IMG/VR virus record: IMGVR_UViG_3300033153_013547
Location: 62,001-126,000 of that record
Strand: one strand, 5' to 3'
Length of the DNA: 64,000 bases
The notes beneath the pieces are model-generated. The model did no database searches, was not told where the DNA came from, and saw nothing but the letters and a program-made list of their open reading frames with translations. The position numbers and the translations under genes were made by a program. Below, piece after piece: positions 5,700-37,452 of this stretch; position 1 is the stretch's first letter, and each line of letters begins with the position of its first letter.

Positions 5700-6248
5700 C
5701 TAAAGGCAGGAGATATCATGAGAACAACAAGGGAAACCGTGTTTTTCTTCGTCCATTAGTTCCAATTCACAAATATGCAACGAAAATTCGATGGCTTCGA
5801 CGCTTTTTTTACCTAATCCTCTGATGCCAAGGAGGTCTTCTTTGCTTTTATCAACAAGCCATTCCAAAGGGGGATAATCCAGATATTGTGGTGGGTGTTT
5901 GTTGCCATGTAATTCTTGCCAATGAGCTAATTTGAGGATTTTTTGAACATAAGGCTCTAGGCCCAACACATGTGTTGTTTGGTTCAGAATGAACCTCATG
6001 GCTTCTTTACCCAATTGATCAGCATGTTCTTTGGCTCTTTCTGGGGTAGGGTGTAATTGCCTACTTAGACCTCTATTGGGTCCTTTCAACGTATGGACAT
6101 ACATGTAATATTCGTTGTTGCCAAGGACTTTACCAATCTCTATTTCCATCACATGTCCATATTTTTTAGTTAGTGTCCCGTCAGCATGTTCGACCCATCT
6201 TGTGGTGCTGTTCATGACACTTTTTGTTTTGTTGTTGTGGTATTCCAT
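5700..6248 (-). CDS. protein with C-terminal RNA polymerase alpha-CTD-like HhH domain
   Basis: LVDKSKEDLLGIRGLGKKSVEAIEFSL resembles the alpha-CTD consensus LxxxxExdLLkixnLGrKSlxEIkexL. Confidence 0.65.
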   Translation of the reverse strand: MEYHNNKTKSVMNSTTRWVEHADGTLTKKYGHVMEIEIGKVLGNNEYYMYVHTLKGPNRGLSRQLHPTPERAKEHADQLGKEAMRFILNQTTHVLGLEPYVQKILKLAHWQELHGNKHPPQYLDYPPLEWLVDKSKEDLLGIRGLGKKSVEAIEFSLHICELELMDEEKHGFPCCSHDISCL

Positions 6249-7353: not shown

Positions 7354-7555
7354 GAGATAATTCTCCTCTAAACAATGATTTTACCCAGTCAAAACAGGGG
7401 TTATTGAACCAGTTGGGTATGCTGGTTACCCCATGGGTGCTTACGCACCAAAAAAAAACATAGTGATGAACGCGATGGCCCTCCCTAGCCAGCCAGGAAG
7501 GAGCAAAAGGGGGGGAATAACTGACCACATGGCCAATTATTCCCCTAACCAATTG

Positions 7556-10315
7556 TTATTTCTGTTGTTTTCCTCCTTGAAGTTGTCTCAATACTTCTTC
7601 CCAGTTGACATCATCTTGATGTTTTCTGAGAATTACCTTGGCAATTATCTGGGGTAGCCTGGTATTTCTTACTCTGGCTTCTTTCATCAGAGCATCCACA
7701 ATTGCTACTCCTTTGTCTGTTTTCAGCATAGGACAGAAACCTATATTGAGAACAGGTTGAACCAGTAGTGATGCATCATCTTCATTGATGTTTTGCATCA
7801 GCAACTCATCATACACTTTTCTTGCCAACAAAACACCCAGTGATTCTTTGGATTGTCCATCTCCTATGAACAGAAGATTGAAGAACCACTTAACCTTGGC
7901 AATTACTTCTTGTTTGGTTGCTGGAATGGGATTTAGCTTATCAGCAATATCCCATATTTCTACTTCTTTGGGTTCCCAGCCTATACCTGCTTTACCAAAG
8001 GTACCTGTGTGTTCTTTGATAGTTTCCAGGTCTGTGGGAACAAACAATACATGATCCCCATCATTGTCTGTGGCATCACACACATATGGTTCTCTTGATC
8101 CATTTCTGGGATCTATTGCTCCAAGCAGTAGAAAATCTCCTTCACCAAGGGCATGCTTGCAGTGTTGGATGATGGTTACATCAATAGCTCCTTGAAATCT
8201 AGGAGCCTTTTTCTGTAATGCCAGACTAAACTTCCCATCCTTTGGGAAATGAGGCATATTGGCTGCCACAAAATTGATTCTTATACCTGCTTGGCTTGCT
8301 ATTTTGTGTAGTTCTGGGTAGTGATATTCTAAAAATGCTTGTAGTCTGTTAGGATCTGATCTGTGGAATCCTATACATCTGGCATAGAATCCTTTTCTGC
8401 CCAAACATCTGAAAGCCATTCTGGCAATCCGTCTTTGTCCACGGGGGGATGTATCTTGTTTTGCTAGGTGTCCTGCATAGACCTGTAGTCCATAAATCTC
8501 ATCTATTTCTGTGATGAGATCATCTACCTCTGTAATTCCCAGTAATTGTTGGGATACATCTGGCATTACATCTCCAAACCATCTGGCAAGTTCTGTTGGA
8601 GCCTTGACAGGAACAGTCAATCCACCTGTAGCTAAATTGGCAATTCTAACTAGGTGGATTTTATCAGTGTCCACAATCTTTCCATCATGGACTTCGAAAT
8701 TGAGACGATCCAGCAGCTTTTTGCCATCTGTTGTCATCAACTTTCTGGTATATGGGCCATCTCTCAAAACACCAGAAATGGGCACAGGTGGTTCAGCCAA
8801 TGCTGCCACAATGACTTTGGGAACTATACAACCACGTAGGTTGTCTAGCTCTACAACGTCAGGAAGACCATATTTAGCCACTCCTGGACGTAAGCAATCA
8901 GCATTGTTGTGGCTGAATACTACCTTTATACCCCTTTTACGGAGTTCTTCAAGGTCTGGATGGTTCCAGTTTGAAACATCCAGAATGGTAACCTTGCCGC
9001 CCCAACCAATCTTGCTGGCTTTGACGCGGCATTTGATTTTCATAGCAAACGTATGGACTGGAATTACTCCCAGTCTGTTTCTGTCATCTCTGAATTTACC
9101 TGGGAGCATTGTGCACCTAACGTGCTGTGGCTGATCCCAGGACAGCAATTCCATACGTCTTCGTGGAAATCTGATGACGGTCTGGTTGATTTCATCATCA
9201 AATTCCCAATCTTCTTTATCGTTATCTAAATGTAGAACATCCAGCCTTGGACGGCTGAATATCAACTTTCCTCCTTCTTCTCTGATCTCAAAACTGGGGA
9301 TTCTGTCTGGCGACTCCCCTGCGCCAGGTGTTCCAGCAATAGTACGTAGTAGCACAAATTCCATTTCGTGCCATTTTCCTAATGCTGAATCACTGTCGAT
9401 CACCACGCACATTCTGTCGTGGTCCAGATCGACATCTGCCACGGTTCCTGATGCTACAAGAACGGGCCCCACTTCCATGTGGGTTTTGATAACGGAGACC
9501 TGGTGTAGTTCTCCGTTTCTAGTAGATTGTCCGCCATCCTTGGCGAATCTTCTGGGGTTGTATAGGCTATAAAACTCTTTCCAGTCCTTATGACGGGTAT
9601 CAACCAAGATTCCCTCGTATCTTGGTTGCATTAGAGGACCTGGATTTTCCCCGTCACAGATCCACTGTTGAACTGACATTGGCAGACCTCTGAACCTTTT
9701 ATCACCCATTCTTACAATGGGTTTGAAGGTCTTGTCCCCTGAAATGGGGATCAATACATGGCTGCCATCTTTGCCAAATTCAAATACTGCTGGTTTGCCT
9801 ATGATTTTGCACGTAAGATTGGCATAATTCCCACGTGGATTTGCCATAGAAATCATATCCAGAACCAGCAGTAGAGCCTTGATCTTGTCATCAACTGGCA
9901 ATCTGGCAAAGGGTTGCATGAACCAGTCAATGAACCTTTCTGCTGACAACACCATCTGTTGCCCTTTGTGCCAAAATAGCACATGAGCAGCAGAGTAAGT
10001 GTCTTTTGTTCCTTGAATTAGCAGACACTTGCCATTGGCAACTTTGCTAATTGCAGGAACAAACCAAACCATCTTTTTCTTGACAAATCCAGGGACATTA
10101 TTTCCAACAATATGAAACTTTCCTGGACCAAGGTGTTTAGACCAGAATTCTTCTGAATCTCTGATGGTCTGGTTGTCAAAAACAGTTTGTTGCTTGCTTT
10201 GTGGAAGAAACCATTGCTTGGCTACCTCCACAAAATCAACTGTATGACTTGTGAATAATTTCACAAGCCATTGAACAATGTCTAGCACCAATCTGGTGCT
10301 GAATTTACACTCCAT
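7556..10315 (-). CDS. putative single-subunit two-barrel (DPBB) RNA polymerase, YonO/RdRP-like
   Basis: 919 aa; DNDGD + hydrophobic strand (HVLFVP); K-x-P ~48 aa upstream; LGRKGFYARCIG similar to beta' LGKRVDYSxRxVI; VKASKIGWGGKVT similar to the beta K...K motif. Confidence 0.55.
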   Translation of the reverse strand: MECKFSTRLVLDIVQWLVKLFTSHTVDFVEVAKQWFLPQSKQQTVFDNQTIRDSEEFWSKHLGPGKFHIVGNNVPGFVKKKMVWFVPAISKVANGKCLLIQGTKDTYSAAHVLFWHKGQQMVLSAERFIDWFMQPFARLPVDDKIKALLLVLDMISMANPRGNYANLTCKIIGKPAVFEFGKDGSHVLIPISGDKTFKPIVRMGDKRFRGLPMSVQQWICDGENPGPLMQPRYEGILVDTRHKDWKEFYSLYNPRRFAKDGGQSTRNGELHQVSVIKTHMEVGPVLVASGTVADVDLDHDRMCVVIDSDSALGKWHEMEFVLLRTIAGTPGAGESPDRIPSFEIREEGGKLIFSRPRLDVLHLDNDKEDWEFDDEINQTVIRFPRRRMELLSWDQPQHVRCTMLPGKFRDDRNRLGVIPVHTFAMKIKCRVKASKIGWGGKVTILDVSNWNHPDLEELRKRGIKVVFSHNNADCLRPGVAKYGLPDVVELDNLRGCIVPKVIVAALAEPPVPISGVLRDGPYTRKLMTTDGKKLLDRLNFEVHDGKIVDTDKIHLVRIANLATGGLTVPVKAPTELARWFGDVMPDVSQQLLGITEVDDLITEIDEIYGLQVYAGHLAKQDTSPRGQRRIARMAFRCLGRKGFYARCIGFHRSDPNRLQAFLEYHYPELHKIASQAGIRINFVAANMPHFPKDGKFSLALQKKAPRFQGAIDVTIIQHCKHALGEGDFLLLGAIDPRNGSREPYVCDATDNDGDHVLFVPTDLETIKEHTGTFGKAGIGWEPKEVEIWDIADKLNPIPATKQEVIAKVKWFFNLLFIGDGQSKESLGVLLARKVYDELLMQNINEDDASLLVQPVLNIGFCPMLKTDKGVAIVDALMKEARVRNTRLPQIIAKVILRKHQDDVNWEEVLRQLQGGKQQK

Positions 10316-10376
10316 GACACACTCCTCTGTTAGTTAAATAGTAACAGCAACTACTCTTCTGTCTGTGGCACCTCCT

Positions 10377-10772: not shown

Positions 10773-10803
10773 CACACACTCCATAGAATATAAATTTGGT
10801 TGA

Positions 10804-10955
10804 AACTCTCTCTCAACCGCCCCTACGGGGGCGTAGCGCCGCAGCAGGCGGGTCAAAGCCGAGCGCGACCGAGCTTGCCGAAGGTCGTGCGTAGTGCGAA
10901 GCAGTGCTTTGATGCGCCTGACCGGCGCGTATAATGAAAAAGTTGAGAGAGAGTT
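10804..10955 (+). other. ~150-nt nested inverted-repeat (rod) element
   Basis: AACTCTCTCTCAAC/GTTGAGAGAGAGTT enclosing GCGCCG/CGGCGC, CAGGCG/CGCCTG, TCAAAGC/GCTTTGA, GCGCGACC/GGTCGTGC. Confidence 0.7.
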
Positions 10956-11050: not shown

Positions 11051-11083
11051 AAAAAAATACCTGCCCCCATTACAGGGGCAGGT
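11051..11083 (-). terminator. rho-independent terminator
   Basis: ACCTGCCCCT-GTAAT-GGGGGCAGGT then T7 on minus strand, just after the 11092 stop. Confidence 0.8.
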
Positions 11084-11744: not shown

Positions 11745-12051
11745 ACCTTATGGATGTCTTTTTGACTTAGAAAAGGCGGTCAGAAATAGAAGAACCTTTC
11801 TCTATCTCCCCCCACCTGGAGAATTGCAAAATTGTCAAAAAGCATCATTGTGTAAACTACAAGCAAGTAATGTGCTACTTATTCTTAGATTGTATCATAT
11901 TGTTCTTAGATTATGCCACATCCTGAACTCAAAGCAAAACAGGGGGCATAGACGTGTTGTATGTGCAGAAGGCGATGGTCTGCCGAAGGCAACACAATGT
12001 AATATTATCTATTAAAGTTGCCCTCAGCAGACCCATCAACATCAATCCAAG

Positions 12052-12222
12052 CTAATCACTTGGGAAAATGGGATACCGTGGATCATCCAGATCCTGGGGG
12101 GGGTCTTCCACTTCATAATGTGGACACCCATCACAATCTGGGCCTACGATATCCGTCAAGCCACACACCGACTCGTTGTCGGATAGGCTAAACCACAGAT
12201 GGACACAGGCCTCTTTTTCCAT
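12052..12222 (-). CDS. 56-aa acidic Cys-containing mini-protein, not in ORF track; last cassette of array
   Basis: AAGGAGG SD supplied by repeat R1; MEKEACVHLW...DDPRYPIFPSD. Confidence 0.7.
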   Translation of the reverse strand: MEKEACVHLWFSLSDNESVCGLTDIVGPDCDGCPHYEVEDPPQDLDDPRYPIFPSD

Positions 12223-12227
12223 CTCTT

Positions 12228-12307
12228 TCCTCCTTCAAGAAAGAATCACTATGCATTCATCATGGCACAATGTAGCTTCATGGCCACCAGCTACTCGGCC
12301 AAGCAGT
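12228..12307 (-). repeat. array repeat R1 (pseudoknot + P3 hairpin + SD)
   Basis: GGCCGAGTAGCTGGTGGCCATGAAGCTACATTGTGCCATGATGAATGCATAG...AAGGAGG. Confidence 0.9.
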
Positions 12308-12631
12308 TTAGTCACGAGGATCTATAACCCCTTCGATTTCATAGTCATCAACCTCTTCGATTTCACGGTCATTATTATAATCATACGAAACTTCATCGAT
12401 CCCCACCCTGAAGAGTGGGGATCCTCCACCACACGCGTCGAGGAACGCCATCTTTACCTGATGGGGATTTTGCCAATCATCATCAGGTTCGATGATCTTA
12501 ACCCCCCGTGTACTTGCAACAATACGGCCACCGATCTCATCAATGGCAAGAAACGCAGGCTTGCCATCATCGGTAACCGACATGAATGCCCCATATGTTA
12601 AATTGAAGTAGTTGTTAAAAAACAGATTCAT
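12308..12631 (-). CDS. acidic hypothetical protein ending DPRD
   Basis: 107 aa, between R2 and R1. Confidence 0.75.
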   Translation of the reverse strand: MNLFFNNYFNLTYGAFMSVTDDGKPAFLAIDEIGGRIVASTRGVKIIEPDDDWQNPHQVKMAFLDACGGGSPLFRVGIDEVSYDYNNDREIEEVDDYEIEGVIDPRD

Positions 12632-12731
12632 CTCTTCCTCCTTAGAAAGAAATCATCACACTTTCGTAGTGATCAAGTGATCGGATGATCACACGTAGCT
12701 TCATGGCCACCAGCTACTCGGCCACACAGCT
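12632..12731 (-). repeat. array repeat R2 (pseudoknot + alternative GTGATC hairpins + SD)
   Basis: Near-identical to R9; shares the pseudoknot with R1/R5/R7/R8. Confidence 0.9.
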
Positions 12732-12887
12732 TTAGTCACGAGGATCCAGATCCAACTCAGGATCCAGATCCAAGACATCAACATCAACCCCCCATCTGCA
12801 ATCTTGTTGATAAACAAGATCGCACTCTTCTCCCTCGGAAAGGAGGCAAGTTATGCCATCCTTCCCTAGGTATTTGCATTTTTTCAT
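12732..12887 (-). CDS. 51-aa acidic Cys-rich mini-protein ending DPRD (start revised)
   Basis: MKKCKYLGKDG...LDLDPRD; the longer ORF-track start reads through repeat R3. Confidence 0.7.
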   Translation of the reverse strand: MKKCKYLGKDGITCLLSEGEECDLVYQQDCRWGVDVDVLDLDPELDLDPRD

Positions 12888-12984
12888 TTTTCTTCTCCCT
12901 TGCCCCAAAGCACAACTCTTTGGGGCAAATCGCCATGCATTCATCATGGCACAATGCAGCCACAGTGCTAACGGCTGCTCAGCT
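12888..12984 (-). repeat. array repeat R3 (pseudoknot + P3 + P4 + SD)
   Basis: GCTGAGCAGCCGTTAGCACTGTGGCTGCATTGTGCCATGATGAATGCATGGCGATTTGCCCCAAAGAGTTGTGCTTTGGGGC. Confidence 0.9.
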
Positions 12985-12990
12985 AAAATG

Positions 12991-13956
12991 TTAAACAGGC
13001 ACAATCGAGTCGCTTCCTGCCTGCAACCTGCGCCTGTTTCCCAACACGATCCCCTCTTTCGTGTTGGCGTAGCAGTAACTGCAAAGGTGTGGGCAGGTGT
13101 TATATTGCCCGATGTCTTTGCTGGCAGCGCATCCGCAGATGCGCCGCTGCCCTGAATCTTTCAGTCCGGCTGGAGTGCCGAAAAGTTTCAGCAGTGCCGG
13201 ATCATTATTTGAGATTCGGAGCAACAGCTCGTCATCGATACATTTGTTTGGCTCGATGCTTGGTTGCTGAAGATCGAGCGGCTCGGCGCAAGTCGCCAAT
13301 TTTAGCCCCCATTGCTGATTCAATCTTACCAAACCTGAAGCTGTCTCACGCATTAAAAATGGTGTGAAATCGAGCCATTTGACGCCCTTTGCCTTTAGGT
13401 TGTTTCGGACTTTACCATAAGCGTCCATATAACTGAAAACCAACTTTTCCGTATATGGATGCAATTGGTCGCCCACTCGTTTAACCTTTTCGAGAAGTCG
13501 CTCAACATTGAGCTCTTCTGTTAAGATTAGAGGATCGAAACGCCAAATCACTCTATGCTTGCCAAGACGGTTGGACAACTCTTGGAATGATTGAATGCGC
13601 GACTCCAGAGGCGGCACATTCGGTTCCAACGCGCCGCCATGGTCTGCGACATAGTCGTTGACCGTGAACTGGAAATAGTAGGCGACGCCTACTTGATCCA
13701 GCTTTTTAAGGTGTTTCATCAAGGGTTTTGGATTCTTACTCCAAAAAACGATGGCGCGCATACGCTCAAAGGAAACAAACTGGGATTTCCCATTAAAAGG
13801 ATTAACCCAGCGTGAATAGCCTTCTTCGAGTCGTCGCATAAACCAATCAGAATAAAAGGCTGGAATATCGGTAGATCGACTAGCCGATATAACTTCCGGC
13901 GCCACAGCCGTATGCACTCCACTGGATGTGGAGATTTCAGTTCTTTTCCACCTCAT
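12991..13956 (-). CDS. DUF1848 family protein (radical-SAM-like, C-terminal Cys cluster)
   Basis: ISASRSTDIPAFYSDWF, FWSKNP, WRFDP, CGCAASKDIGQYNTCPHLCSYCYAN. Confidence 0.88.
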   Translation of the reverse strand: MRWKRTEISTSSGVHTAVAPEVISASRSTDIPAFYSDWFMRRLEEGYSRWVNPFNGKSQFVSFERMRAIVFWSKNPKPLMKHLKKLDQVGVAYYFQFTVNDYVADHGGALEPNVPPLESRIQSFQELSNRLGKHRVIWRFDPLILTEELNVERLLEKVKRVGDQLHPYTEKLVFSYMDAYGKVRNNLKAKGVKWLDFTPFLMRETASGLVRLNQQWGLKLATCAEPLDLQQPSIEPNKCIDDELLLRISNNDPALLKLFGTPAGLKDSGQRRICGCAASKDIGQYNTCPHLCSYCYANTKEGIVLGNRRRLQAGSDSIVPV

Positions 13957-14050
13957 CTACTCTCCCTACCCCAAAGCACAACTCTTTGGGGCAAATCGCC
14001 ATGCATTCATCATGGCACAATGCAACTTCATTGCTATCAGTTGCTCAGCT
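13957..14050 (-). repeat. array repeat R4
   Basis: Same architecture; S2 stem variant GCAACT/AGTTGC. Confidence 0.9.
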
Positions 14051-14057
14051 AATTAAT

Positions 14058-14582
14058 TCACCAATTCTGTTGAACAAACGCCACAATGGCGTCAAAGGTG
14101 TTTAGATCAACATCTTTGACGCCATTGTTGCCAATGATGGTCAACGGAATCCCCAGGCCAAGGGCAATCCTTATCCCCTGGCCTGTACCACCAAGGCCCC
14201 GTTTGTTAGACGGAGCAGCAATTACAGAATCACAACCAAAAATGATTCTGTAATTCCTTCCGTGCAACTTCCTTGCCCCCATAGACAAATATCCTGGGGC
14301 AGGATGATATTTGTCAACGGAAGCAAAGGCCGCCTGGTCGCTCATGGACAAAACATGAACGACCTTGCAAAGGCCCTGGATTTGAGAATTGTACGACGGC
14401 CACGGCACATGACCTTCAGTACTTATTCCCAAATTTCTGGCATGCTCGATGGCAACTTTGTCAATACCATCAGCGCAGCCAGAGACAACTACAGACCCTT
14501 TATCAAGAGATTCTACAATCTCTCTGACAATGCGGATCTGGGGACCAGAGGGGTCTCTGGTCCCTATCACAGCAATCTTCAT
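14058..14582 (-). CDS. SLOG superfamily (DprA/Smf-like) nucleotide-binding protein
   Basis: IAVIGTR, VVSGCADGID, GGTGQGIRIALGLGIP. Confidence 0.75.
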   Translation of the reverse strand: MKIAVIGTRDPSGPQIRIVREIVESLDKGSVVVSGCADGIDKVAIEHARNLGISTEGHVPWPSYNSQIQGLCKVVHVLSMSDQAAFASVDKYHPAPGYLSMGARKLHGRNYRIIFGCDSVIAAPSNKRGLGGTGQGIRIALGLGIPLTIIGNNGVKDVDLNTFDAIVAFVQQNW

Positions 14583-14666
14583 TCCTTTTCTCCTTCAAAA
14601 AAGAATCGCCATGCATTCATCATGGCACAATGTAGCTTCATGGCCATCAGCTACTCGGCCAGGCAG
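14583..14666 (-). repeat. array repeat R5 (no P4)
   Basis: Close match to R1. Confidence 0.9.
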
Positions 14667-14673
14667 ACAATTG

Positions 14674-14934
14674 TTAATGAACAATCACTCCATCTTTCAC
14701 CCTTCTTAGGGCAAAGATGAAGTCATCGCCTTGCATATAGACGATGACCTTTACATCCGAGGTGTCGAAACACTCTATACTGGTCTCGACAAATTTTAAG
14801 GGATCGTTAAGGTACGCATCAGCGTCATTAACATCCAGCACCCATGTGCCGGTTATCGGGAGCCTAAACGCCTCCCGAATGATAACATGTGATCCCGGAC
14901 TTGCCGGGATCGTGGGGTATATAATTCTCCTCAT
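14674..14934 (-). CDS. hypothetical protein (start revised to MRRIIYP)
   Basis: AAGGAG SD of R6. Confidence 0.65.
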   Translation of the reverse strand: MRRIIYPTIPASPGSHVIIREAFRLPITGTWVLDVNDADAYLNDPLKFVETSIECFDTSDVKVIVYMQGDDFIFALRRVKDGVIVH

Positions 14935-14940
14935 CCCCAT

Positions 14941-15032
14941 CTCCTTTGCCCCAAAGCACAACTCTTTGGGGTAAAATCGCCATGTATTCATCATGGCACA
15001 ATGTAGCCTTATGACTATCGGCTGCTCAGTCA
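14941..15032 (-). repeat. array repeat R6
   Basis: S1 variant GACTG/TAGTC. Confidence 0.9.
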
Positions 15033-15039
15033 AGAGAAC

Positions 15040-15423
15040 TTAGGCAGAATCTCTGATCTTCATCAGGATCCTGCCCAGATGGTTCAGTCCAACTCCGTTG
15101 CTTACGCCCCAGAATTGGTCTCCCCACCAATTCTCTTCAACGATCTCCCCCTTTATGGCCTGAAGTTTGGCCATAAAGACAGGATCGCTGAACTTTTTAC
15201 TTACCAGATCCTCCATGATCTGGAGTTTGACCTGATCCCAGTCAGGCCTAAGCCTAACTGTTTTGCCAATCTTTTTGGCAATAAACCCGTTGGTCACACC
15301 AACGAATCTTGCCTGATCAGCAGGATCAGTACACTTTGCCTTCTGGTACTCCACCTCCACACAGTACCCTAACGAATTAGGACACATGTTGGACAGAAAC
15401 CAGAAGATGCCCCTGAATCTCAT
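15040..15423 (-). CDS. NADAR (YbiA-like) ADP-ribose/N-glycosidase
   Basis: FLSN, VEYQKAK, RPDWDQVKLQIM, KF, IVEENWWGDQFWG, GLNHLGRILMKIR; AAGGAGG SD. Confidence 0.9.
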   Translation of the reverse strand: MRFRGIFWFLSNMCPNSLGYCVEVEYQKAKCTDPADQARFVGVTNGFIAKKIGKTVRLRPDWDQVKLQIMEDLVSKKFSDPVFMAKLQAIKGEIVEENWWGDQFWGVSNGVGLNHLGRILMKIRDSA

Positions 15424-15433
15424 AATCACCTCC

Positions 15434-15847
15434 TTAGTGATATATCTCAACATTCAGATCAAGATCAGCCAGTTTATCAGACATCATCTGCCTAACCACT
15501 GGCCAATCCAGACCTCCAAGGCCACATCCAAGCCTGGGGAAGGCTATGGACCTAAAACTCCAGGTTTGGGTGGCAAAATCATCAAGACCATCAGAGATAT
15601 ACTCCAATTTGCTTGGATCTCTCCAATGATCCTTGGTGGGGAACAGTAGAACATTCTCCACCAAGATGACCTTGCCAGGCCTTAGAATGCCTGCAGAGCA
15701 TAGCCTGGCATACTCTGCAAACACCATGGGAAACCTTGCTTTGAACTCCAAGGCAAGACCCTTGCCCATCACGCCAACACAGTTGACGGGATTGACAAGA
15801 ACCTCACATTTGGAATCAAACAGATCCCCCCGCAGCAACAACAACAT
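15434..15847 (-). CDS. macrodomain ADP-ribosylhydrolase (DarG/Poa1/TARG1-like class)
   Basis: GDLF, VNPVNCVGVMGKGLALEFK, FPTKDHW, SIAFPRLGCGLGGLDW. Confidence 0.9.
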   Translation of the reverse strand: MLLLLRGDLFDSKCEVLVNPVNCVGVMGKGLALEFKARFPMVFAEYARLCSAGILRPGKVILVENVLLFPTKDHWRDPSKLEYISDGLDDFATQTWSFRSIAFPRLGCGLGGLDWPVVRQMMSDKLADLDLNVEIYH

Positions 15848-15951
15848 CTCCTCCTCCTTTACCCCAAAGCACAACTCTTTGGGGTAAAATCGCCATGTAT
15901 TCATCATGGCACAATGTAGCTTCATGGCCACCAGCTACTCGGCCAAGCAGT
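15848..15951 (-). repeat. array repeat R7
   Basis: GGCCG-type pseudoknot + P3 + P4. Confidence 0.9.
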
Positions 15952-16155
15952 TTAATCACGAGGATATCTGATGACATCATTCATGGTATCATGGTCAATA
16001 TCAGCAGATATCGTCTTGATTGCTTCCAACTTGATGAAAGCGCACAGAAGTCCCCGCACTTCTTCGATTTCATCAAATAAAATCTTGCTCCGATGAAAGA
16101 GCAAGACTATCGTCACCACAAGGGCGGCGATAATAATCGACATTAATAACAACAT
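15952..16155 (-). CDS. 67-aa membrane-anchored protein ending YPRD (start revised)
   Basis: MLLLMSIIIAALVVTIVLLF hydrophobic N-term; SD from R8. Confidence 0.7.
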   Translation of the reverse strand: MLLLMSIIIAALVVTIVLLFHRSKILFDEIEEVRGLLCAFIKLEAIKTISADIDHDTMNDVIRYPRD

Positions 16156-16258
16156 CTCCTCCTCCTTTACCCCAAAGCACAACTCTTTGGAGCAAAATCG
16201 CCATGTATTCATCATGGCACAATGCAGCTTCATGGCCACCAGCTACTCGGCCAAGCAG
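16156..16258 (-). repeat. array repeat R8
   Basis: Near-identical to R7. Confidence 0.9.
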
Positions 16259-16561
16259 TTACTTCTTCTGCTTTTCAACCCATTCCTTTATCACGTCTCC
16301 GTGACAAGGGCTGGGTTTGCAAAAGCAGACAAGGGTCTTCCCATCAAGTTCAAGCACCCTCCTCTTGAACTCGGGGTCAGACCCCAATCTGCTCAGGAAG
16401 TACTCCCTATACTTAGGTAGGGAGCTACCCCCTGAGCCGGGGAATGGATTCCCAAAATATCCATCCATTCCCCTACCAGCCCTTCCTATGTAAACATAGG
16501 AAGGGTCATCGCGCCACCCCTTAGGGGCGTCGCGAATATTAATAACGTTGATAGGCAACAA
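16259..16561 (-). CDS. DUF4326 family protein
   Basis: YVYIGR...FGNPF...LDGKTLVCFCKPSPCHGDVI; AAGGAGG SD favours TTG at 16561 (ORF track start 16594). Confidence 0.85.
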   Translation of the reverse strand: MLPINVINIRDAPKGWRDDPSYVYIGRAGRGMDGYFGNPFPGSGGSSLPKYREYFLSRLGSDPEFKRRVLELDGKTLVCFCKPSPCHGDVIKEWVEKQKK

Positions 16562-16629
16562 AATCACCTCCTTTTGTTGCCGGTCAATCGACACGGTTTC
16601 GGCAGACCACGTGTCATTCTGCAGACAAA

Positions 16630-17070
16630 TTACATGAAATCTCCCACAATCAGGTCACCCTTCTTGTGGGAGATTTTCTTCCCCCTTGGTCGGGGCGCAG
16701 GCACCTTCTTGGCGGGCACCTTCTTGGCAGGTGCCTTAACCTCTCTGGGCCACTTGCAATAATGCTTGACTGGCCCAGAGGCAGGCCGCTCTGCTGTTGC
16801 TGCCACCACTTCCACAGCAACAGCCTTTTTCACAGTAGGCCCAACCACATCATGGATGAGCCTACTGCAACACAGCTGCTTCCTGAGACGAAGTATTGCC
16901 TCGCCTCCGTCCACGCCTGTGGGGATCGTGCCCCTCCAACCGGGAACACGTTCCCCGTTGAGGTAGGCTTCACAGTACTGAAGCCCACCCCTTTCAAACA
17001 GGGGGGAGAATTTAATCTTTACCCTCTTCCCCCCCAACAAAATGTCAGGGGGACGAATCAAATTAGGCAC
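16630..17070 (-). CDS. hypothetical protein with basic PAKK tail
   Basis: AAGGAG SD, GTG start; KAPAKKVPAKKVPAP repeat. Confidence 0.65.
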   Translation of the reverse strand: MPNLIRPPDILLGGKRVKIKFSPLFERGGLQYCEAYLNGERVPGWRGTIPTGVDGGEAILRLRKQLCCSRLIHDVVGPTVKKAVAVEVVAATAERPASGPVKHYCKWPREVKAPAKKVPAKKVPAPRPRGKKISHKKGDLIVGDFM

Positions 17071-17143
17071 AGTAACACACTCCTTTCTGCCAGGTATATC
17101 CTGGATCAGATGAGCAGTTTATTGTCTTGCTCAGGACACAATG

Positions 17144-17464
17144 TTATAAACCAAGTTCCTCCCTGACACGATCCCTATTGACGGGATAAATGTTTATCTC
17201 ATCTATCCCATCAATAGAAACCCTGAACAATTGCCAGGGGCCCCCATCTGCTGGGATGAACCAGTATAGAGGATTATACCCCTTGGCTTCCTCAAACTCC
17301 TTCGCTGCTCTTCCGAACAGCGAATTCTTCCGGGGATTTTGTTGCCAAACTTCTCCCCAAATCTGCCCTATTGGCTTGGCAGATTTGAGCATCACCCCAG
17401 AAATGGTGGCTCTTGGTGCGGAGCAGACCGCCTTACGCACCAAGGCAATAATTTTCTCTTCCAT
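17144..17464 (-). CDS. hypothetical protein
   Basis: SD from R9. Confidence 0.75.
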   Translation of the reverse strand: MEEKIIALVRKAVCSAPRATISGVMLKSAKPIGQIWGEVWQQNPRKNSLFGRAAKEFEEAKGYNPLYWFIPADGGPWQLFRVSIDGIDEINIYPVNRDRVREELGL

Positions 17465-17562
17465 TTTTCCTCCTTAGAAAGAAATCATCACACTTTCGTA
17501 GTGATCAAGTGATCGGATGATCACGCGTAGCTTCATGGCCATCAGCTACTCGGCCATACAGT
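17465..17562 (-). repeat. array repeat R9 (R2 type)
   Basis: Near-identical to 12632-12731. Confidence 0.9.
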
Positions 17563-17645
17563 TTAGTCACGAGGGTCCAGAATGTCACCATGGCTTGTTG
17601 TCAGCCAGAAATGGCTTTCAACCCATAGACCAATGCCCCAACTGA

Positions 17646-18611
17646 CTAAATTCCCCGTGCCCAGAGAGCGTTCCGGCGCGCTTCTTTTTCGGCGCGCGCC
17701 TTTTCAACTCGTTCGCGAAGCTCCGGGGGAACATAGCCCGGCGTGTCGGGCGGTTCCGTAGCAGACACCGTAAATGTCTGCAGGAAAACGCTCGCGTACT
17801 CTTCCACCTGTTCGAGGGACAGCTCGACCCCCGAACGCAGCTCTTTGGGCAACTGGTAATCCAGATCAACTTCCACCACTCTCTCGGCGTGAACCGCGAT
17901 GTGTGGCGGGAGGCTGCCTTGCGTGGTATAAACGTCCTTCCCCATCACGTCATCCACTGCGGCATTCTCCACGACTGGCGTTCCCTTTGTCACCAGTCCT
18001 ATTTTCTCCAGATACGTCACGAACGCCGGATGGCGCGTGACGATGATGTTCCCATTTTCCATGGGAACAATATCCGACGCCCTGAGCAAATCTGACGCGA
18101 TGAAAGAGTACGCCTTGAGCTCACCGCTCGCGTACTCTTCCACCTGTTCAAGGGTCAGTTCGACCCCAGAACGCAGTTCATCGGGTAAATCGAGCGTGAG
18201 CTCGATTAACTTTTCTGAATACACCGCCAAGTGCAGGGGAATATACCCCTGCGTGGTGTAAACAGACCTTAAGGGACCGAGAGGTATCCCCGTCATGTCA
18301 TGACGGCTCCGCACATTCTTGAGCCACGTCACACGCCGTGCGCTGCCGAATGTGTGGATCTTCGCAAAATAACGCGCCACTGCGAGGTGGCGCGAAACGA
18401 CAAGATCTTTCGGCGGATAAATCTCCACTAGTCGGACAACGCGCGACTCGCCCTCCTCCAGGTAATTCCCGTAGGAATCCTGGACGGAACCCGAGGCTAT
18501 CGTCGTTCGATAGCCGTGCTCGATATCTATGGGGCCGCACCGGCGACCCTTGAAGTCCCTGATTTTCTCAAGCCTAGCCTCATTCCAGGCTTGAAACTCC
18601 TTCTCATTCAT
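17646..18611 (-). CDS. tandem two-domain Csx16-like (Cas_VVA1548) putative ring nuclease
   Basis: Two repeats of VV(S/T)RH...G(Y/S)(I/L)PxH(L/I)A...LPxELRSGVEL(T/S)LEQVEEYA. Confidence 0.7.
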   Translation of the reverse strand: MNEKEFQAWNEARLEKIRDFKGRRCGPIDIEHGYRTTIASGSVQDSYGNYLEEGESRVVRLVEIYPPKDLVVSRHLAVARYFAKIHTFGSARRVTWLKNVRSRHDMTGIPLGPLRSVYTTQGYIPLHLAVYSEKLIELTLDLPDELRSGVELTLEQVEEYASGELKAYSFIASDLLRASDIVPMENGNIIVTRHPAFVTYLEKIGLVTKGTPVVENAAVDDVMGKDVYTTQGSLPPHIAVHAERVVEVDLDYQLPKELRSGVELSLEQVEEYASVFLQTFTVSATEPPDTPGYVPPELRERVEKARAEKEARRNALWARGI

Positions 18612-18668
18612 ATCAATCTCTCCTTGCCCTGCACTAGCCGCGGCAGGGCTTCGCGGTTGTGTGTTACC

Positions 18669-18953
18669 CTATGCAAACTGCACGATGTACGCCACGGGCG
18701 TGCTGGCGTATTCGCGCACTTGCTCAAGGGTCAGCTCGACCCCCCTCATCTCCGCCGGAATATCCAGCGGAACTTCGATCACTCGCCGCGCATGCACGGC
18801 GAGCCGAAGAGGAAGAACGCCGAAAACGTTCTTCCCCATTACATCGTCGACCGTGGCATGTGCCACGATGGGCGTGCCTTCCGGCACTAACCCTATCTCG
18901 ATCAAATACGTCACCAATGCTGGGTGACGCGTAACAACAATACTTTTATTCAT
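18669..18953 (-). CDS. csx16: Csx16-like (Cas_VVA1548) putative cOA ring nuclease, 94 aa (start revised)
   Basis: IVVTRHPA...GVLPLRLA...LDIPAEMRGVELTLEQV fits the Csx16 pattern hhsRHpgA...GtLPxhLA...LdlPxexRGxELs. Confidence 0.75.
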   Translation of the reverse strand: MNKSIVVTRHPALVTYLIEIGLVPEGTPIVAHATVDDVMGKNVFGVLPLRLAVHARRVIEVPLDIPAEMRGVELTLEQVREYASTPVAYIVQFA

Positions 18954-19048
18954 CTCTTCTCCTTTACCCCAAAGCACAACTCTTTGGGGCAAATCGCCAT
19001 GTATTCATCATGGCACAATGCAGCCACAGTGCTGTCGGCTACTCAGCT
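18954..19048 (-). repeat. array repeat R10
   Basis: Same architecture as R3. Confidence 0.9.
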
Positions 19049-19086
19049 GTGGGGGGCGATCCTGTTTCGATGTTGACAGGATCCAT

Positions 19087-19117
19087 AAAAAAAGAGAGAG
19101 GCCCGAAGGCCCCTCTC
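19087..19117 (-). terminator. rho-independent terminator (copy 1)
   Basis: GAGAGGGGCC-TTCG-GGCCTCTCTC + T7. Confidence 0.85.
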
Positions 19118-19120
19118 CGA

Positions 19121-19210
19121 TGATGCCTATATTTCTCCTTTCCCGGCATCAGGGAGTTTCACCACTATGCAGGTGACGCATACATTTTGTTTATCCAGAT
19201 GTAAACTGGA
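19121..19210 (-). ncRNA. candidate structured RNA, three tandem H-type pseudoknots (copy 1)
   Basis: TCCAG/CTGGA + TACAT/ATGTA; TGC/GCA + TCACC/GGTGA; TCCC/GGGA + TGATGCC/GGCATCA; covaries with copy 2. Confidence 0.55.
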
Positions 19211-19234
19211 ATCCGGTTTTGAAAGGGGAGGGGG

Positions 19235-19690
19235 TTACTCTATTATTGGGAGGACATCCCCTTCTTCAAAGTCATACTGCCACGGATCATAATCCGTGGC
19301 AAGACCAATTGCTGTGACCATGTCTTTTGCGACGATCACAGCAAACCCCTGAAATTCCTCGCCCCCATCGTAGGGGACGAGGAACCCCCCGGGTTCCTTT
19401 TCTTCCGGACACTCCGGAAGGTTGGGGGCAAGTTTTCTTGCCCCCAACTGAAGGGTCCTCCAGACGGAGGTTTTTACTCCGTCTAGAAACCCTGACTCCC
19501 CACGTAAAATGGGGTAAAACACGCTAGTCGCTGCAGCGGCCAGCGTGCTCGCTCCTCCGGCTCTCATGAGCCGGAAGTACGAAATATTGCCGCTAACAGC
19601 AACTGGGCACCACGTCCTGTGGAGGGGCAGACACTGCCCATACCCCTCCACAGGGCGTAAAAAGACCGATAGCCAAAAAATTTTAGCCAT
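19235..19690 (-). CDS. hypothetical protein, paralog of 19972..20442 (start revised)
   Basis: MAKIFWLSV...FRLMRAGGA...LVPYDGGE. Confidence 0.75.
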   Translation of the reverse strand: MAKIFWLSVFLRPVEGYGQCLPLHRTWCPVAVSGNISYFRLMRAGGASTLAAAATSVFYPILRGESGFLDGVKTSVWRTLQLGARKLAPNLPECPEEKEPGGFLVPYDGGEEFQGFAVIVAKDMVTAIGLATDYDPWQYDFEEGDVLPIIE

Positions 19691-19696
19691 TCCCAT

Positions 19697-19787
19697 CTCC
19701 CTTACCCCAAAGCACAACTCTTTGGGGTAAAATCGCCATGTATTCATCATGGCACAATGCAACCACAGTGCTAACGGCTGCTCAGCT
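19697..19787 (-). repeat. array repeat R11
   Basis: Same architecture as R3. Confidence 0.9.
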
Positions 19788-19825
19788 GTGGGGGGCGATC
19801 CTGTCTCGATGTTGACAGGATCCAT

Positions 19826-19857
19826 AAAAAAAAGAGAGAGGCCCGAAGGCCTCTCTC
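19826..19857 (-). terminator. rho-independent terminator (copy 2)
   Basis: GAGAGAGGCC-TTCG-GGCCTCTCTC + T8. Confidence 0.85.
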
Positions 19858-19860
19858 CGG

Positions 19861-19952
19861 TGATACCTATATTTCTCCTTTCCCGGTATCAGGGAGTTTC
19901 ACCACTATGCAGGTGACGCATACATTTTGTTTATCCAGATGTAAAAACTGGA
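19861..19952 (-). ncRNA. candidate structured RNA, three tandem pseudoknots (copy 2)
   Basis: TGATACC/GGTATCA compensatory change; a 2-nt insertion falls in a loop. Confidence 0.55.
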
Positions 19953-19971
19953 ATCCGATTTTGAAAAGGGG

Positions 19972-20442
19972 TTACCCTATTATCGGGATAATATCCCGAT
20001 AATCCGTAGCAAAGTCGTCTCGCCACAGATCGTAATCTATGGCGAGATCAATCGCCGTGGTCGCATTTTTTGCGACTACGACGACAAACCCCTCGAATTC
20101 GCCCCCATCGTAGGGGACGAGCACTTTGCAGAATACCCCGGAACGTTCCGGGATATCGGGGGCAAGCAAAGCTACCCCCACCTGCATTGTTCTCCGGACA
20201 AATGTTACCCACTTGTCTAGAGAATTTACCTCGCTCAAGAGCCAATCCGCATTTGTTAAAATGGGATAAAATATACTAGCCACTATAGCGGTTAGTATAT
20301 CCGCTCCTCCGGCTCTCATGAGCCGGAAGTGCGAAACGCCGTCGCTTTCAGCGACGACGTTCCATGACTCATTATCGGGGGGGTTTTCTTTAAACCCCTC
20401 GATCTTGTCGAGTAAAACTGACAGCCAAAAGATCTTGGCCAT
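19972..20442 (-). CDS. hypothetical protein, paralog of 19235..19690 (start revised)
   Basis: Shared motifs; SD from R12. Confidence 0.75.
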   Translation of the reverse strand: MAKIFWLSVLLDKIEGFKENPPDNESWNVVAESDGVSHFRLMRAGGADILTAIVASIFYPILTNADWLLSEVNSLDKWVTFVRRTMQVGVALLAPDIPERSGVFCKVLVPYDGGEFEGFVVVVAKNATTAIDLAIDYDLWRDDFATDYRDIIPIIG

Positions 20443-20537
20443 CTCCTCCTCCTTTGCCCCAAAGCACAACTCTTTGGGGCAAATCGCCATGTATTCATCA
20501 TGGCACAATGCAACTTCATTGCTATCAGTTGCTCAGC
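20443..20537 (-). repeat. array repeat R12
   Basis: R4-type pseudoknot + P3 + P4 + AAGGAGGAGG. Confidence 0.9.
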
Positions 20538-20628
20538 GTCATATCGCAGATTTCCTAACCGGTGTCTGCCAACCGGCCACAGCCAAAATAGTGACTGTGG
20601 CCACCGCCTACGTTGCGGAGGCGGTGGT

Positions 20629-27073: not shown

Positions 27074-27604
27074 ATGCCAGACATAAAAGAATATACAAGT
27101 ATTGATCCTAATGTAAAGTTTTTGGGTGCTGCTACTGTGCACTCTTTTACTAGTATAGATGGAGATGTAGTGATTGGAGACAATACCACAATATGGCAAT
27201 CTACAAATATTGCAGGCAAAGTTTCCGTAGGCTCAAATTGTGTAATTGGTTCTCAGTGCTCAATTCTGGGCACCAAGATGCCCACAATCATTGGCAAACA
27301 TGTTCGTATGCAGTCTCATTGTTTTATTCCTGATGGCACAGTAATTGGAGACAACACCTTTCTTGCCCCTGGGGTTACGATTTTGAACGATAAATATCCC
27401 CCATCATCCAGTCACAAAGATTGGAGTCCCGTAACAATCGAAAATGGGGCACGTATAGGCGGAGGAGTAGTCATTTTACCCGGCGTCACCATTGGCAAGG
27501 GTGCTCTGGTGGGGGCAGGTTCGGTTGTGACCAAGGACGTTATTCCCAACTCTGTGGTCAAAGGAAGCCCAGCAAGGATTTGGGTGATACCATCCCTTGA
27601 ATAA
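27074..27604 (+). CDS. hexapeptide-repeat sugar N-acetyltransferase (WbpD/WlbB-like)
   Basis: Left-handed beta-helix repeats; NDKYP; [29 protein letters not shown]. Confidence 0.88.
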
Positions 27605-28439
27605 TAAAACATTTGCCATATCTGGATTGGGTAGCATATCCCCACGTCATTTGGAAGCCGTGAAGCATATTGGGGGCATCATTCTTGACGTACATGATCC
27701 TGATTGGAGCAAATCATATTTTTATGGAAGGCAGGCAGTCTTTCACAAATCCATTGAAAGCATGCTTGAAAAATCAGAAGCAGAATGGTTTGTCATTTTG
27801 TCTCCCAGTAAATACCACTTTTCTCAATCTATGAAAGCCCTGGATCTGGGCAAGAAAGTTATAGTAGAAAAACCTGCTGCTATGACTCTATATGACGTTC
27901 TACAATATTCTGGACGAGAAATCTATACCGTATCACAACTACGATATCTCGACGACATTATCAACATCAAAAATAAAATATCTACAGGTCACCATGATGT
28001 AAACATCAAGATCATAGCACACAGGCATCCCATAACCATGGCAAACTGGAGACATGACATAAATTGGTCTGGTGGGCTAATGTATTTCGTAGGCATTCAT
28101 TACATAGACTTAGTCACTTGGTTGTTTGGCAAGATGGAAAAATTAGAACAAGTTACTTGGCTAAACAAACAAAAGTGCCAATTTAGTATGGAGTTAGAAA
28201 GAGCCACAGTCAATGCCAGCTTTGAAATTACTGAAACCCAACCAAACCACAAGAGCATGATCATAGATGATATAGAAATAGATTTGGCTGCCAAGTTTTA
28301 TGATTTACATTGTTATTTATATGAAGATATAATGGCAGGACATGGCATTCATCCAATGGATGTATATCATACTATGGAGATTATTCATAAGATTAATGGC
28401 TATGCCAATGAAGGATATGGCTACAATGCTTCTAAATAA
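27597..28439 (+). CDS. Gfo/Idh/MocA oxidoreductase (WbpB/WlbA-like)
   Basis: [33 protein letters not shown]. Confidence 0.85.
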
Positions 28440-29389: not shown

Positions 29390-29398
29390 TTGTGTCTC

Positions 29399-30280: not shown

Positions 30281-30295
30281 TATTGTTTTCTCCTA

Positions 30296-31531: not shown

Positions 31532-31532
31532 G

Positions 31533-32558: not shown

Positions 32559-32567
32559 AATAATTCC

Positions 32568-33392: not shown

Positions 33393-33399
33393 TGATTCT

Positions 33400-34392: not shown

Positions 34393-34394
34393 AA

Positions 34395-37290: not shown

Positions 37291-37452
37291 TTGTCTTGTT
37301 CTTTTCGGGGTGTTCTGGATCTTTGATGCTATTCATTTTTATTTTCATTATGTATTTTATGATGACATGGTACACAAATGGATCATATCCACTTCTTTCT
37401 TTTAATTGCTTATACACAATTCAATCCAGTCAAATAGTATTTGTTTCTTTCT

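What the first reader, a model, noticed from the sequence alone, without database searches (positions are those of the whole stretch)
7556..10315. Divergent single-subunit two-barrel RNA polymerase candidate downstream of the array
Seen: a 919-aa ORF with, in order, VKASKIGWGGKVT, LGRKGFYARCIG, QKKAP and DATDNDGDHVLFV. Known: two-barrel polymerases (beta/beta', eukaryotic RdRP, phage SPbeta YonO) have two conserved lysines in the first barrel, then R/K-x-P and DxDGD in the second; order, spacing and size fit. Inference: an early-expressed phage RNAP too diverged for routine annotation, which might transcribe the late module or recognise the hairpin elements nearby.
Basis: partly seen in the sequence, partly recalled or inferred. 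Interest (0 to 1): 0.78.

Follow-up and report, generated by a model that had tools for sequence, protein, structure and literature searches.

The report
Orphan phage protein, possible hidden RNA polymerase
A 919-residue protein of an uncultured 261-kb phage has no detectable relative anywhere; it carries the metal-binding signature of "two-barrel" RNA polymerases, and a protein language model places it near them, but no alignment, profile or structure prediction could confirm it.

Summary
The ORF is real. It lies at window 7556-10315 on the MINUS strand, encodes 919 aa and has a good RBS. All four quoted motifs are present in the stated order. The protein is a complete sequence orphan: in about 15 billion proteins only itself was found, and Pfam, PHROGs, NCBIfam, PDB sequences and 50,697 phage genomes gave nothing.

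For the two-barrel polymerase idea:
- DNDGD (aa 750-754) is identical to YonO's motif.
- K-A-P lies 47 aa upstream; the family has R-x-P at 43-45.
- The ESM-Atlas feature search puts 71/100 (whole protein) and 72/100 (aa 1-690) nearest clusters in PF05183 RdRP/YonO-like families. A control orphan from the same genome gave 0/100.
- The gene lies in an early-type region, in a short unit between terminator-like hairpins. The validated P23-45 gp64 and the predicted 0305phi8-36 gp99 also sit among small ORFs.

Against it:
- A YonO/gp99 profile that reaches eukaryotic RdRPs (1e-9) and P23-45 gp64 (hhalign 5e-4) sees nothing beyond the DxDGD loop.
- The motif flanks fit no better than shuffles.
- Most family-invariant residues are missing, and the invariant Arg is Lys.
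- AlphaFold models are unusable (pLDDT 36-40).

Verdict: plausible (about 0.45) but unproven. Biochemistry or an experimental structure must decide.

The parts
7556..10315 (-). 919-aa ORF (stop codon included), a sequence orphan and candidate two-barrel polymerase
   Evidence: identical product on two JGI contigs
10322..10327 (-). Shine-Dalgarno-like GAGGAG, 6 nt before the ATG at 10315
   Evidence: read
8054..8068 (-). codons for D750-N-D-G-D754, the putative Mg2+-binding Asp triad. A hydrophobic run follows, with P-T at +6/+7 as in P23-45 gp64
   Evidence: It is the only DxDGD in a long ORF of the window (the other two lie in ORFs of 42 and 52 aa), and the only family block above chance (p 0.047)
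8201..8209 (-). codons for K703-A-P705, the possible equivalent of the invariant R-x-P of the Asp-bearing barrel (Lys in place of Arg), 47 aa before D750
8369..8404 (-). codons for aa 638-649. Together with R636, this region holds the protein's one match that I found by eye to the family pattern R-x4-K-G (R636...K641-G642). It lies only 62 aa before K-A-P, against about 220 aa in the family, and is predicted helical at low confidence
   Evidence: the family matrix scan did not return it
The K432...K441 spacing of 9 equals R139...K148 of P23-45 gp64, but the YonO/gp99 matrices give it no support
7512..7545 (-). 15-bp-stem terminator-like hairpin 10 nt after the stop codon
10377..10772 (-). 131-aa orphan gene immediately upstream, with a near-identical translation-initiation sequence; probably co-transcribed with the candidate
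   Evidence: repeats D13/D20; gene call in L096
10800..10950 (-). GC-rich, strongly structured leader-like element ahead of the two-gene unit
   Evidence: MFE -83 kcal/mol, z -6.3; no Rfam family
11059..11083 (-). strong terminator-like hairpin plus T-run that closes the preceding unit

Best explanation
The ORF most likely encodes an extremely diverged single-subunit two-barrel nucleotide polymerase, functionally like YonO of SPbeta, gp99 of 0305phi8-36 or gp64 of P23-45.

Proposed mechanism, all inferred:
1. The gene is expressed early, as a two-gene unit bounded by terminator-like hairpins.
2. D750, D752 and D754 sit on a loop of the Asp-bearing double-psi beta-barrel and hold the catalytic Mg2+. 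K703 and P705 occupy the R-x-P position of the same barrel.
3. A second barrel, N-terminal to this one, supplies the basic residues that contact the incoming NTP. Its position is unresolved; the candidate sites are aa 345-350, 432-441 and 636-642.
4. The enzyme then transcribes a later class of phage genes independently of the host polymerase.

What is shown: the ORF, its motifs, their spacing, its orphan status, its neighbours, and the language-model neighbourhood. What is inferred: the fold, the catalysis, the template and the target genes.
For: 1. DNDGD at aa 750-754 is letter-identical to YonO's catalytic motif. Mutating that triad abolishes YonO activity (PMC5467207).
2. K-A-P lies 47 aa upstream, against R-x-P at 43 aa in YonO and 44 aa in gp99 and 45 aa in QDE-1 (residue numbers in PMC2919709). 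The joint chance is 0.0028 per shuffled protein.
3. After the motif comes a hydrophobic run and P-T at +6/+7, as in the validated polymerase P23-45 gp64.
4. ESM-Atlas features: 71/100 nearest clusters for the whole protein and 72/100 for aa 1-690 (no DNDGD) carry PF05183, including plant and nematode RdRPs. A 1003-aa orphan from the same genome gives 0/100.
5. Context: a large ORF among small orphan ORFs, in its own short unit between terminator-like hairpins. 0305phi8-36 gp99 is described as apparently monocistronic next to the host-takeover genes (PMC2147016), and gp64 sits among small ORFs. Among the phages searched, the portal matched only the 0305phi8-36 group.
6. Precedent: P23-45 gp64 and gp96 were picked out by the DxDxD signature with little or no other detectable similarity, and then proven to be two-barrel RNA polymerases. 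Many families share nothing but that region (PMC10770324).
Against: - No homologue at all in 1.84 billion cluster representatives or in the word-indexed 5.8 billion clusters.
- No Pfam, PHROGs, NCBIfam or PDB-sequence hit even at E 1-10. tblastn against phages finds nothing at E 10.
- YonO/gp99-family profiles find only 11 columns around DNDGD (hhalign E 0.15) or nothing (hmmsearch). Comparable profiles of the same family reach eukaryotic RdRPs at 1e-9 and gp64 at hhalign E 5e-4.
- Co-linear block-matrix chains score no better than shuffles (p 0.3-0.9).
- The flanks of DNDGD, anchored to the family profile, fit no better than shuffled flanks (p 0.25-1.0).
- Of the 22 residues invariant across eight diverse family members, only the three Asp and the Pro are found in register. 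The Arg is Lys, and DG, YQ, IG..SN and D..K are absent in register.
- Atlas scores (0.78 and 0.71; 149 and 90 shared features) lie in the range the tool calls 'a lead only'.
- DxDGD is expected by chance about three times per genome of this size (my arithmetic).
Confidence: 0.45

Rival explanations
1. An orphan early protein of some other, unknown function (host takeover, anti-defence or DNA handling), in which DNDGD and K-A-P are chance occurrences and the language-model neighbourhood is an artefact of composition or local motifs.
For: - All formal homology tests are null.
- The motif pair is expected about 0.06 times per window by chance (my arithmetic).
- By eye I found several attractive 'matches' to family motifs that contradicted each other in order, for example a YPEL at aa 666-669 downstream of the G-R-K-G at 639-642, the reverse of the family's order. 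This shows how easily such motifs arise.
- Atlas scores are below the tool's own reliability range.
- Every neighbouring gene is also an orphan.
Against: Of all Pfam families, the Atlas neighbours point to exactly the one the motif suggests. They do so for the part without the motif as well, and not for a control orphan. Size, position and transcription-unit layout match those of the known or predicted phage single-subunit two-barrel polymerases.
Confidence: 0.4
2. A different Mg2+-dependent enzyme that uses an acidic DxD(G) loop. One option is a HAD-type phosphatase or polynucleotide-phosphatase domain at the C-terminus (motif I DxDG, and a GDG...E at aa 818-824 that resembles motif IV). The other is a Toprim-like domain (DxDG-x-H-V resembles the GyrB DxDG-x-H-I; E725-G-D lies upstream). 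These consensus motifs are from my own knowledge.
For: Motif resemblance only, read from the sequence.
Against: - No HAD or Toprim Pfam model hits even at E 1, although these families are usually easy to detect.
- HAD motif I normally has T/V-L after the G and a fully hydrophobic strand before it.
- The Glu-to-DxD distance here (25 aa) is too short for a Toprim fold.
- No Atlas neighbour cluster listed carries these families.
Confidence: 0.06
3. A structural or Ca2+-binding protein in which DNDGD is an EF-hand-like or DxDxDG-type calcium loop.
For: DxDGD overlaps the start of the EF-hand loop consensus (my own knowledge).
Against: Positions 6 and 12 of the loop (His and Thr here) do not fit. 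The gene lies in the early-type, small-ORF region, not in the structural module at 44-64 kb. It has a single copy of the motif and no repeats.
Confidence: 0.04

Closest known systems
YonO of Bacillus prophage SPbeta (single-subunit DNA-dependent RNA polymerase; PMC5467207)
   Same: Identical DNDGD. A basic-x-Pro motif about 45 aa upstream. Similar size (839 against 919 aa). Phage-encoded. Language-model neighbours of the candidate are YonO-like clusters.
   Different: No alignable similarity outside the loop. The candidate lacks the family-invariant SSAGQIR, DG-x-G, NYQ, IG..SN and ID.AK motifs in register, and has Lys for the invariant Arg.
gp99 of Bacillus jumbo phage 0305phi8-36 (PF05183 RdRP-like putative RNA polymerase; PMC2147016)
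   Same: A large ORF next to small host-takeover-type ORFs in a jumbo phage, in its own short transcription unit. The candidate's portal matched only this phage group among the phages searched (25-27% identity).
   Different: gp99 matches Pfam RdRP at 1.2e-18, and the candidate does not match at all. BLASTP between them gives only E 1.7 around the Asp loop.
gp64 non-virion RNA polymerase of Thermus phage P23-45 (PDB 8F72; PMC10770324)
   Same: Recognised originally by the DxDGD signature with extremely low overall similarity. Sits among small ORFs. The motif continues with hydrophobic residues and P-T at +6/+7 in both. K432...K441 of the candidate has the same 9-residue spacing as R139...K148 of gp64.
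   Different: gp64 is shorter (616 aa). It keeps R-x-P, 38 aa before the triad, and the YonO/gp99 profile still detects it weakly (hhalign E 5e-4), unlike the candidate.
gp66 virion RNA polymerase of crAss-like phage phi14:2 (PDB 6VR4) and QDE-1 (PDB 2J7N)
   Same: Single-chain two-barrel enzymes. gp66 contains a DFDxD motif (abstract). QDE-1 has R962-x-P964 and D1007-Y-D-G-D1011, a spacing of 45 aa.
   Different: gp66 is virion-packaged, with DFDxD. QDE-1 is found by the phage-family profile (1.5e-8), and the candidate is not.

Membership tests
Two-barrel RNA polymerase superfamily (eight universal residues, PMC2919709) | Asp triad DxDxD on the beta'-like barrel | tested here: met
   D750-N-D752-G-D754. 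The chance of DxDGD in a shuffle of this protein is 0.029.
Two-barrel RNA polymerase superfamily | Invariant Arg-x-Pro 33-45 aa before the triad | tested here: inconclusive
   K703-A-P705 lies 47 aa before D750. The Pro is present, the Arg is replaced by Lys, and the spacing is 2-4 aa longer than in YonO, gp99 and QDE-1.
Two-barrel RNA polymerase superfamily | Beta-like barrel with one Asp and two basic residues (Rpb2 D837, K979, K987; QDE-1 D709, R738, K743) | tested here: inconclusive
   Three mutually exclusive candidate sites (R345/K350, K432/K441, R636/K641-G). None ranks among the top matches of the family matrices and none beats shuffles.
Two-barrel RNA polymerase superfamily | Two double-psi beta-barrel folds facing one active site | not testable with these tools
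   AlphaFold2 without homologues gave pLDDT 35.6 for the full length and 39.5 for aa 575-805. The ESM Atlas model has pLDDT 0.33. There are no homologues from which to build an alignment.
Two-barrel RNA polymerase superfamily | Template-dependent RNA synthesis abolished by mutating the Asp triad | not testable with these tools
   Needs biochemistry, as done for YonO (PMC5467207) and gp64/gp96 (PMC10770324).
PF05183 RdRP / YonO-like family | Significant match to the family HMM or profile | tested here: not met
   Pfam gives no hit at E 1. hmmsearch with YonO-family and diverse-family HMMs gives none. hhalign gives only 11 columns, E 0.15. Positive controls: gp99 matches Pfam at 1.2e-18, the family profile reaches PDB RdRPs at 1e-9, and hhalign reaches gp64 at 5e-4.
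PF05183 RdRP / YonO-like family | Family-invariant residues in register (DG, R-x4-KG, YQ, NPE Pro, GK Gly, R-x-P, DxDxD, IG..N, D..K; 22 invariant columns in 8 diverse members) | tested here: not met
   Only the three Asp and the Pro are found in register. The co-linear chain test gives p 0.3-0.9 and the anchored flank test p 0.25-1.0.
HAD phosphatase superfamily | Motif I DxDG[TV] after a hydrophobic strand, plus motifs II-IV, detectable by Pfam HAD models | tested here: not met
   No Pfam hit. Asp instead of Thr/Val after the Gly, and polar residues before the motif.
Toprim domain | Conserved Glu about 45-80 aa before DxD, detectable by Pfam Toprim models | tested here: not met
   No Pfam hit. 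The nearest E-G-D is only 25 aa upstream.

The most novel reading that the evidence does not exclude
The protein founds a new, sequence-orphan family of single-subunit two-barrel RNA polymerases in an uncultured jumbo phage. It would be more diverged from YonO-like enzymes than those are from eukaryotic RdRPs, with Lys in place of the 'invariant' Arg and a rearranged or unusually placed first barrel. It would run a host-independent transcription programme. One possibility is that it is tied to the structured leader RNAs repeated in the adjacent island; no evidence supports that link.
Probability: 0.4. Interest if true: 0.7.

Novelty: new variant of a known kind. Interest (0 to 1): 0.45.

Why it matters
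Single-subunit two-barrel RNA polymerases (YonO, crAss gp66, P23-45 gp64 and gp96) are rare windows on how minimal the universal transcription fold can be and on its pre-LUCA history. Each was found from little more than a DxDxD motif. If this orphan is another, three things would follow:
- The known sequence space of the fold would widen, including tolerance of Lys at a position so far invariant as Arg.
- It would show that protein-language-model features can flag such enzymes where HMMs fail.
- It would give a handle on transcription in a jumbo-phage lineage with no cultured member.

If it is not one, it is a caution that DxDGD plus a proline is expected by chance in a genome of this size.

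Tried and rejected
- Direct searches for homologues (phmmer on 1.84e9 representatives; two word-indexed searches, including aa 560-919 at E 10; IMG/VR peptide scan; tblastn on phages at E 0.01 and E 10): only the protein itself.
- Pfam, PHROGs, NCBIfam and PDB sequences: nothing.
- Pairwise BLASTP against YonO, gp99 and gp64: only the Asp loop, E 0.8-24.
- Profiles: an 18-member YonO alignment, a 16-member alignment and an 8-member diverse alignment, by hhalign and hmmsearch. All null.
- My own tests: a co-linear block-matrix chain against shuffles, per-block maxima, and an anchored profile alignment of the DNDGD flanks. All null. The chain test also misses the verified gp64 (p 0.13-0.35), so it has little power. 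hhalign does detect gp64.
- Eyeballed co-linear motif matches at aa 257-353 (for example P-S-F-E-I-R...K) and at 639-663. Rejected as evidence because the matrices do not rank them, and because a YPEL match falls out of order.
- Searches for related phages to find an orthologue (portal in IMG/VR; gp99 in IMG/VR and in phages): none close. gp99 is itself isolated.
- AlphaFold2 on the full length and on aa 575-805: unusable, so no fold search was run.
- Search for a phage-wide promoter motif: only the island repeats came up.
- Paralogues in the roughly 73 kb of this genome that I held: none.
- Not done: walking the other roughly 190 kb of the contig to look for other RNA polymerase genes.
Full report
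OBSERVATION. The 2,760-nt ORF lies on the minus strand of window 7556-10315. It starts at ATG 10315 behind a GAGGAG (10327-10322) and encodes 919 aa. The window is positions 62,001-126,000 of a 261,124-bp IMG/VR contig (UViG_3300033153_013547). An identical protein is encoded on a 9.9-kb contig from the sibling sample 3300033148. The genome is a phage. It carries a portal, a terminase-like ORF with an intein, a class II ribonucleotide reductase with an intein, and PhoH. It has no close relative in IMG/VR. In GenBank phages its portal matched only the Bacillus jumbo phage 0305phi8-36 group, at 25-27% identity.

ORPHAN STATUS. phmmer against 1.84 billion cluster representatives of about 15 billion proteins returned only the query. 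Two word-indexed searches of 5.8 billion clusters did the same; the second covered aa 560-919 at E up to 10. Pfam, PHROGs and NCBIfam (E up to 1-10) and PDB sequences (E up to 10) gave nothing relevant. tblastn against 50,697 phage genomes found nothing even at E 10. The roughly 73 kb of this genome that I could read holds no paralogue.

WHAT THE FAMILY LOOKS LIKE. I fetched the following sequences:
- YonO and 120 relatives;
- 80 IMG/VR relatives;
- distant phage members at about 24% identity: Enterocloster PMBT24, Bacillus BUCT082, Thomasclavelia TR-TP1 and two gut contigs;
- gp99 of 0305phi8-36, which matches Pfam RdRP at 1.2e-18.

Eight diverse members share 22 invariant columns (alignment). 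These are a DG of a DG-x-G loop, R-x4-K-G, YQ, a Pro of NPE, a Gly of GK, R-x-P, D-x-D-x-D, G...N of IG..SN, and D..K. A profile of these eight finds eukaryotic RDR2 and QDE-1 in the PDB at about 1e-9. A near-identical eight-member alignment reaches the experimentally verified, very divergent P23-45 gp64 by hhalign at E 5e-4 over 88 columns. So the profiles can see far.

TESTS OF HOMOLOGY.
- Against the candidate, hhalign aligns only 11 columns at DNDGD (E 0.15) or an irrelevant N-terminal stretch.
- hmmsearch with all filters off reports nothing.
- I built position-specific matrices for the conserved ungapped blocks and scored the best co-linear chain. The candidate scores like its own shuffles (p 0.3-0.9).
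- Block by block, only the DxDGD block exceeds chance (p 0.047).
- Conditional on DNDGD, an anchored profile alignment of the 90 upstream and 126 downstream residues fits no better than shuffled flanks (p 0.25-1.0).

Caveat: my chain test also fails on gp64 (p 0.13-0.35), so it is insensitive. The hhalign contrast (5e-4 against 0.15) is the fairer comparison.

By eye I found several tempting matches: P-S-F-E-I-R-x4-K at 340-350, L-G-R-K-G...D-P...A-F at 638-661, and YPEL at 666-669. They are mutually inconsistent in order and the matrices do not rank them, so I do not count them.

WHAT REMAINS IN FAVOUR.
(a) The Asp loop is identical to YonO's. K-A-P sits 47 aa upstream, against 43 in YonO, 44 in gp99 and 45 in QDE-1. 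The joint chance is 0.0028 per shuffled protein. By my arithmetic that is about 0.06 per window and about 0.3 per genome. On its own this is weak.
(b) The loop continues as a hydrophobic run with P-T at +6/+7, exactly as in gp64. This was noticed post hoc.
(c) The ESM-Atlas feature search puts 71 of the 100 nearest clusters in PF05183 (phage, Bacillota, plant and nematode RdRPs). It still puts 72 of 100 there when only aa 1-690 are given, which excludes K-A-P and DNDGD. A 1003-aa orphan of the same genome gets tail-fibre-type neighbours and no RdRP. Scores are low (0.78 and 0.71), and the tool itself calls such hits leads. I could not verify that the partial query is embedded on its own. Even so, the family it names is the one the motif predicts.
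(d) Context. The gene lies in a minus-strand region of small orphan ORFs. It forms a two-gene unit that begins after a strong terminator-like hairpin (11083-11059) and a structured leader, and ends at a 15-bp hairpin 10 nt after the stop. 0305phi8-36 gp99 is described as apparently monocistronic next to host-takeover genes (PMC2147016). P23-45 gp64 sits among small ORFs.
(e) Precedent. gp64 and gp96 of P23-45 were picked out by DxDxD with little or no other detectable similarity and were then proven to be two-barrel RNA polymerases. That paper states that many of the 23 families share nothing beyond that region (PMC10770324).

STRUCTURE. With no homologues, AlphaFold2 ran on single sequences and gave pLDDT 35.6 (full length) and 39.5 (aa 575-805). 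The Atlas model has pLDDT 0.33. Both models do agree, at low confidence (about 50), that aa 607-675 are helical. This mildly disfavours putting a barrel strand at R636-K641.

WEIGHING. I start from a small prior that a given jumbo-phage window holds a hidden two-barrel polymerase. The motif raises it only to odds of about 1:4 once the look-elsewhere effect is included. The absence of any other family signal lowers it further. The language-model result, its persistence without the motif, the clean control, and the context raise it again to roughly even. I put the polymerase reading at 0.45, an unrelated orphan function at 0.40, and other metal-dependent or Ca-binding readings at 0.10 together.

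COMPARISON AND MEMBERSHIP. The candidate is not a member of PF05183 as that family is defined, because both the HMM test and the invariant-residue test fail. For membership of the wider two-barrel superfamily, the eight universal residues are the criterion (PMC2919709). Four are met (three Asp and the Pro). One is conservatively substituted (Arg to Lys). Three, in the first barrel, are unlocated. The fold and the activity are untestable here. If the protein is real as a polymerase, it is a new variant of a known kind, further from YonO than YonO is from eukaryotic RdRPs.

THE 'HAIRPIN ELEMENTS'. The hairpins near the gene are part of a 95-nt, three-hairpin element that sits immediately 5' of the RBS of eight minus-strand genes between 12.9 and 20.6 kb. 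Three pairs of stem 1 show compensatory changes, and no Rfam family matches. None lies at the candidate gene, and I found no window-wide promoter motif. Nothing links these elements to the candidate beyond proximity.

Noticed in passing
window 12885-20594, minus strand (hairpin cores at 12904, 13970, 14950, 15863, 16171, 18968, 19706, 20458): Eight copies of a roughly 95-nt element with three hairpins, ending directly at the RBS of the downstream gene. It is almost invariant in sequence, but three pairs of stem 1 show compensatory changes. It has no Rfam family. It looks like a repeated structured 5' leader (a regulatory or processing RNA).
   Followed up: partly
window about 12000-20600, minus strand: A higher-GC island (47-53% against about 38%) whose cassettes encode Cas_VVA1548-like, DUF4326, Macro, NADAR, DprA/SLOG-like and DUF1848 proteins, each behind the repeated leader. 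It looks like an anti-defence or ADP-ribose-reversal gene array.
   Followed up: partly
window about 10800-10950, minus strand: A GC-rich, strongly structured element (MFE -83 kcal/mol over 216 nt, z -6.3) between a terminator and the 131-aa gene preceding the candidate. It was called as coding (201 aa) on one contig but not on the sibling contig. No Rfam match.
   Followed up: partly
window 27074-40201: A cluster of about 15 genes with glycosyltransferase, radical SAM, PGA_cap, UDP-GlcNAc 2-epimerase-like, GFO/IDH/MocA oxidoreductase and hexapeptide acyltransferase domains: a phage-borne sugar-biosynthesis or modification module.
   Followed up: no
window 41225-44446 and 53323-56220, plus strand: Inteins interrupt the class II ribonucleotide reductase (with a LAGLIDADG homing endonuclease) and the 965-aa terminase-like ORF.
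   Followed up: no
window 5700-6248, minus strand: A 182-aa orphan 1.3 kb downstream of the candidate has a sub-threshold match to the helix-hairpin-helix of the bacterial RNA polymerase alpha C-terminal domain (E 4e-4, 20.4 bits against a cut-off of 23.8).
   Followed up: no
L100 35290-37140 (Thermus phage P23-45, NC_009803): The RefSeq record labels gene 64, the experimentally proven non-virion RNA polymerase, as 'head protein'. The PDB entries 8F72 and 8F5M also carry unrelated automatic names.
   Followed up: no
L084 38024-38590 (0305phi8-36 gp97) against window 14058-14582: A SLOG/DprA-like small protein lies close to the RdRP-like gene in 0305phi8-36 (DUF1273), and a DprA/SLOG-like protein lies 4 kb from the candidate here. 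This may be coincidence.
   Followed up: no
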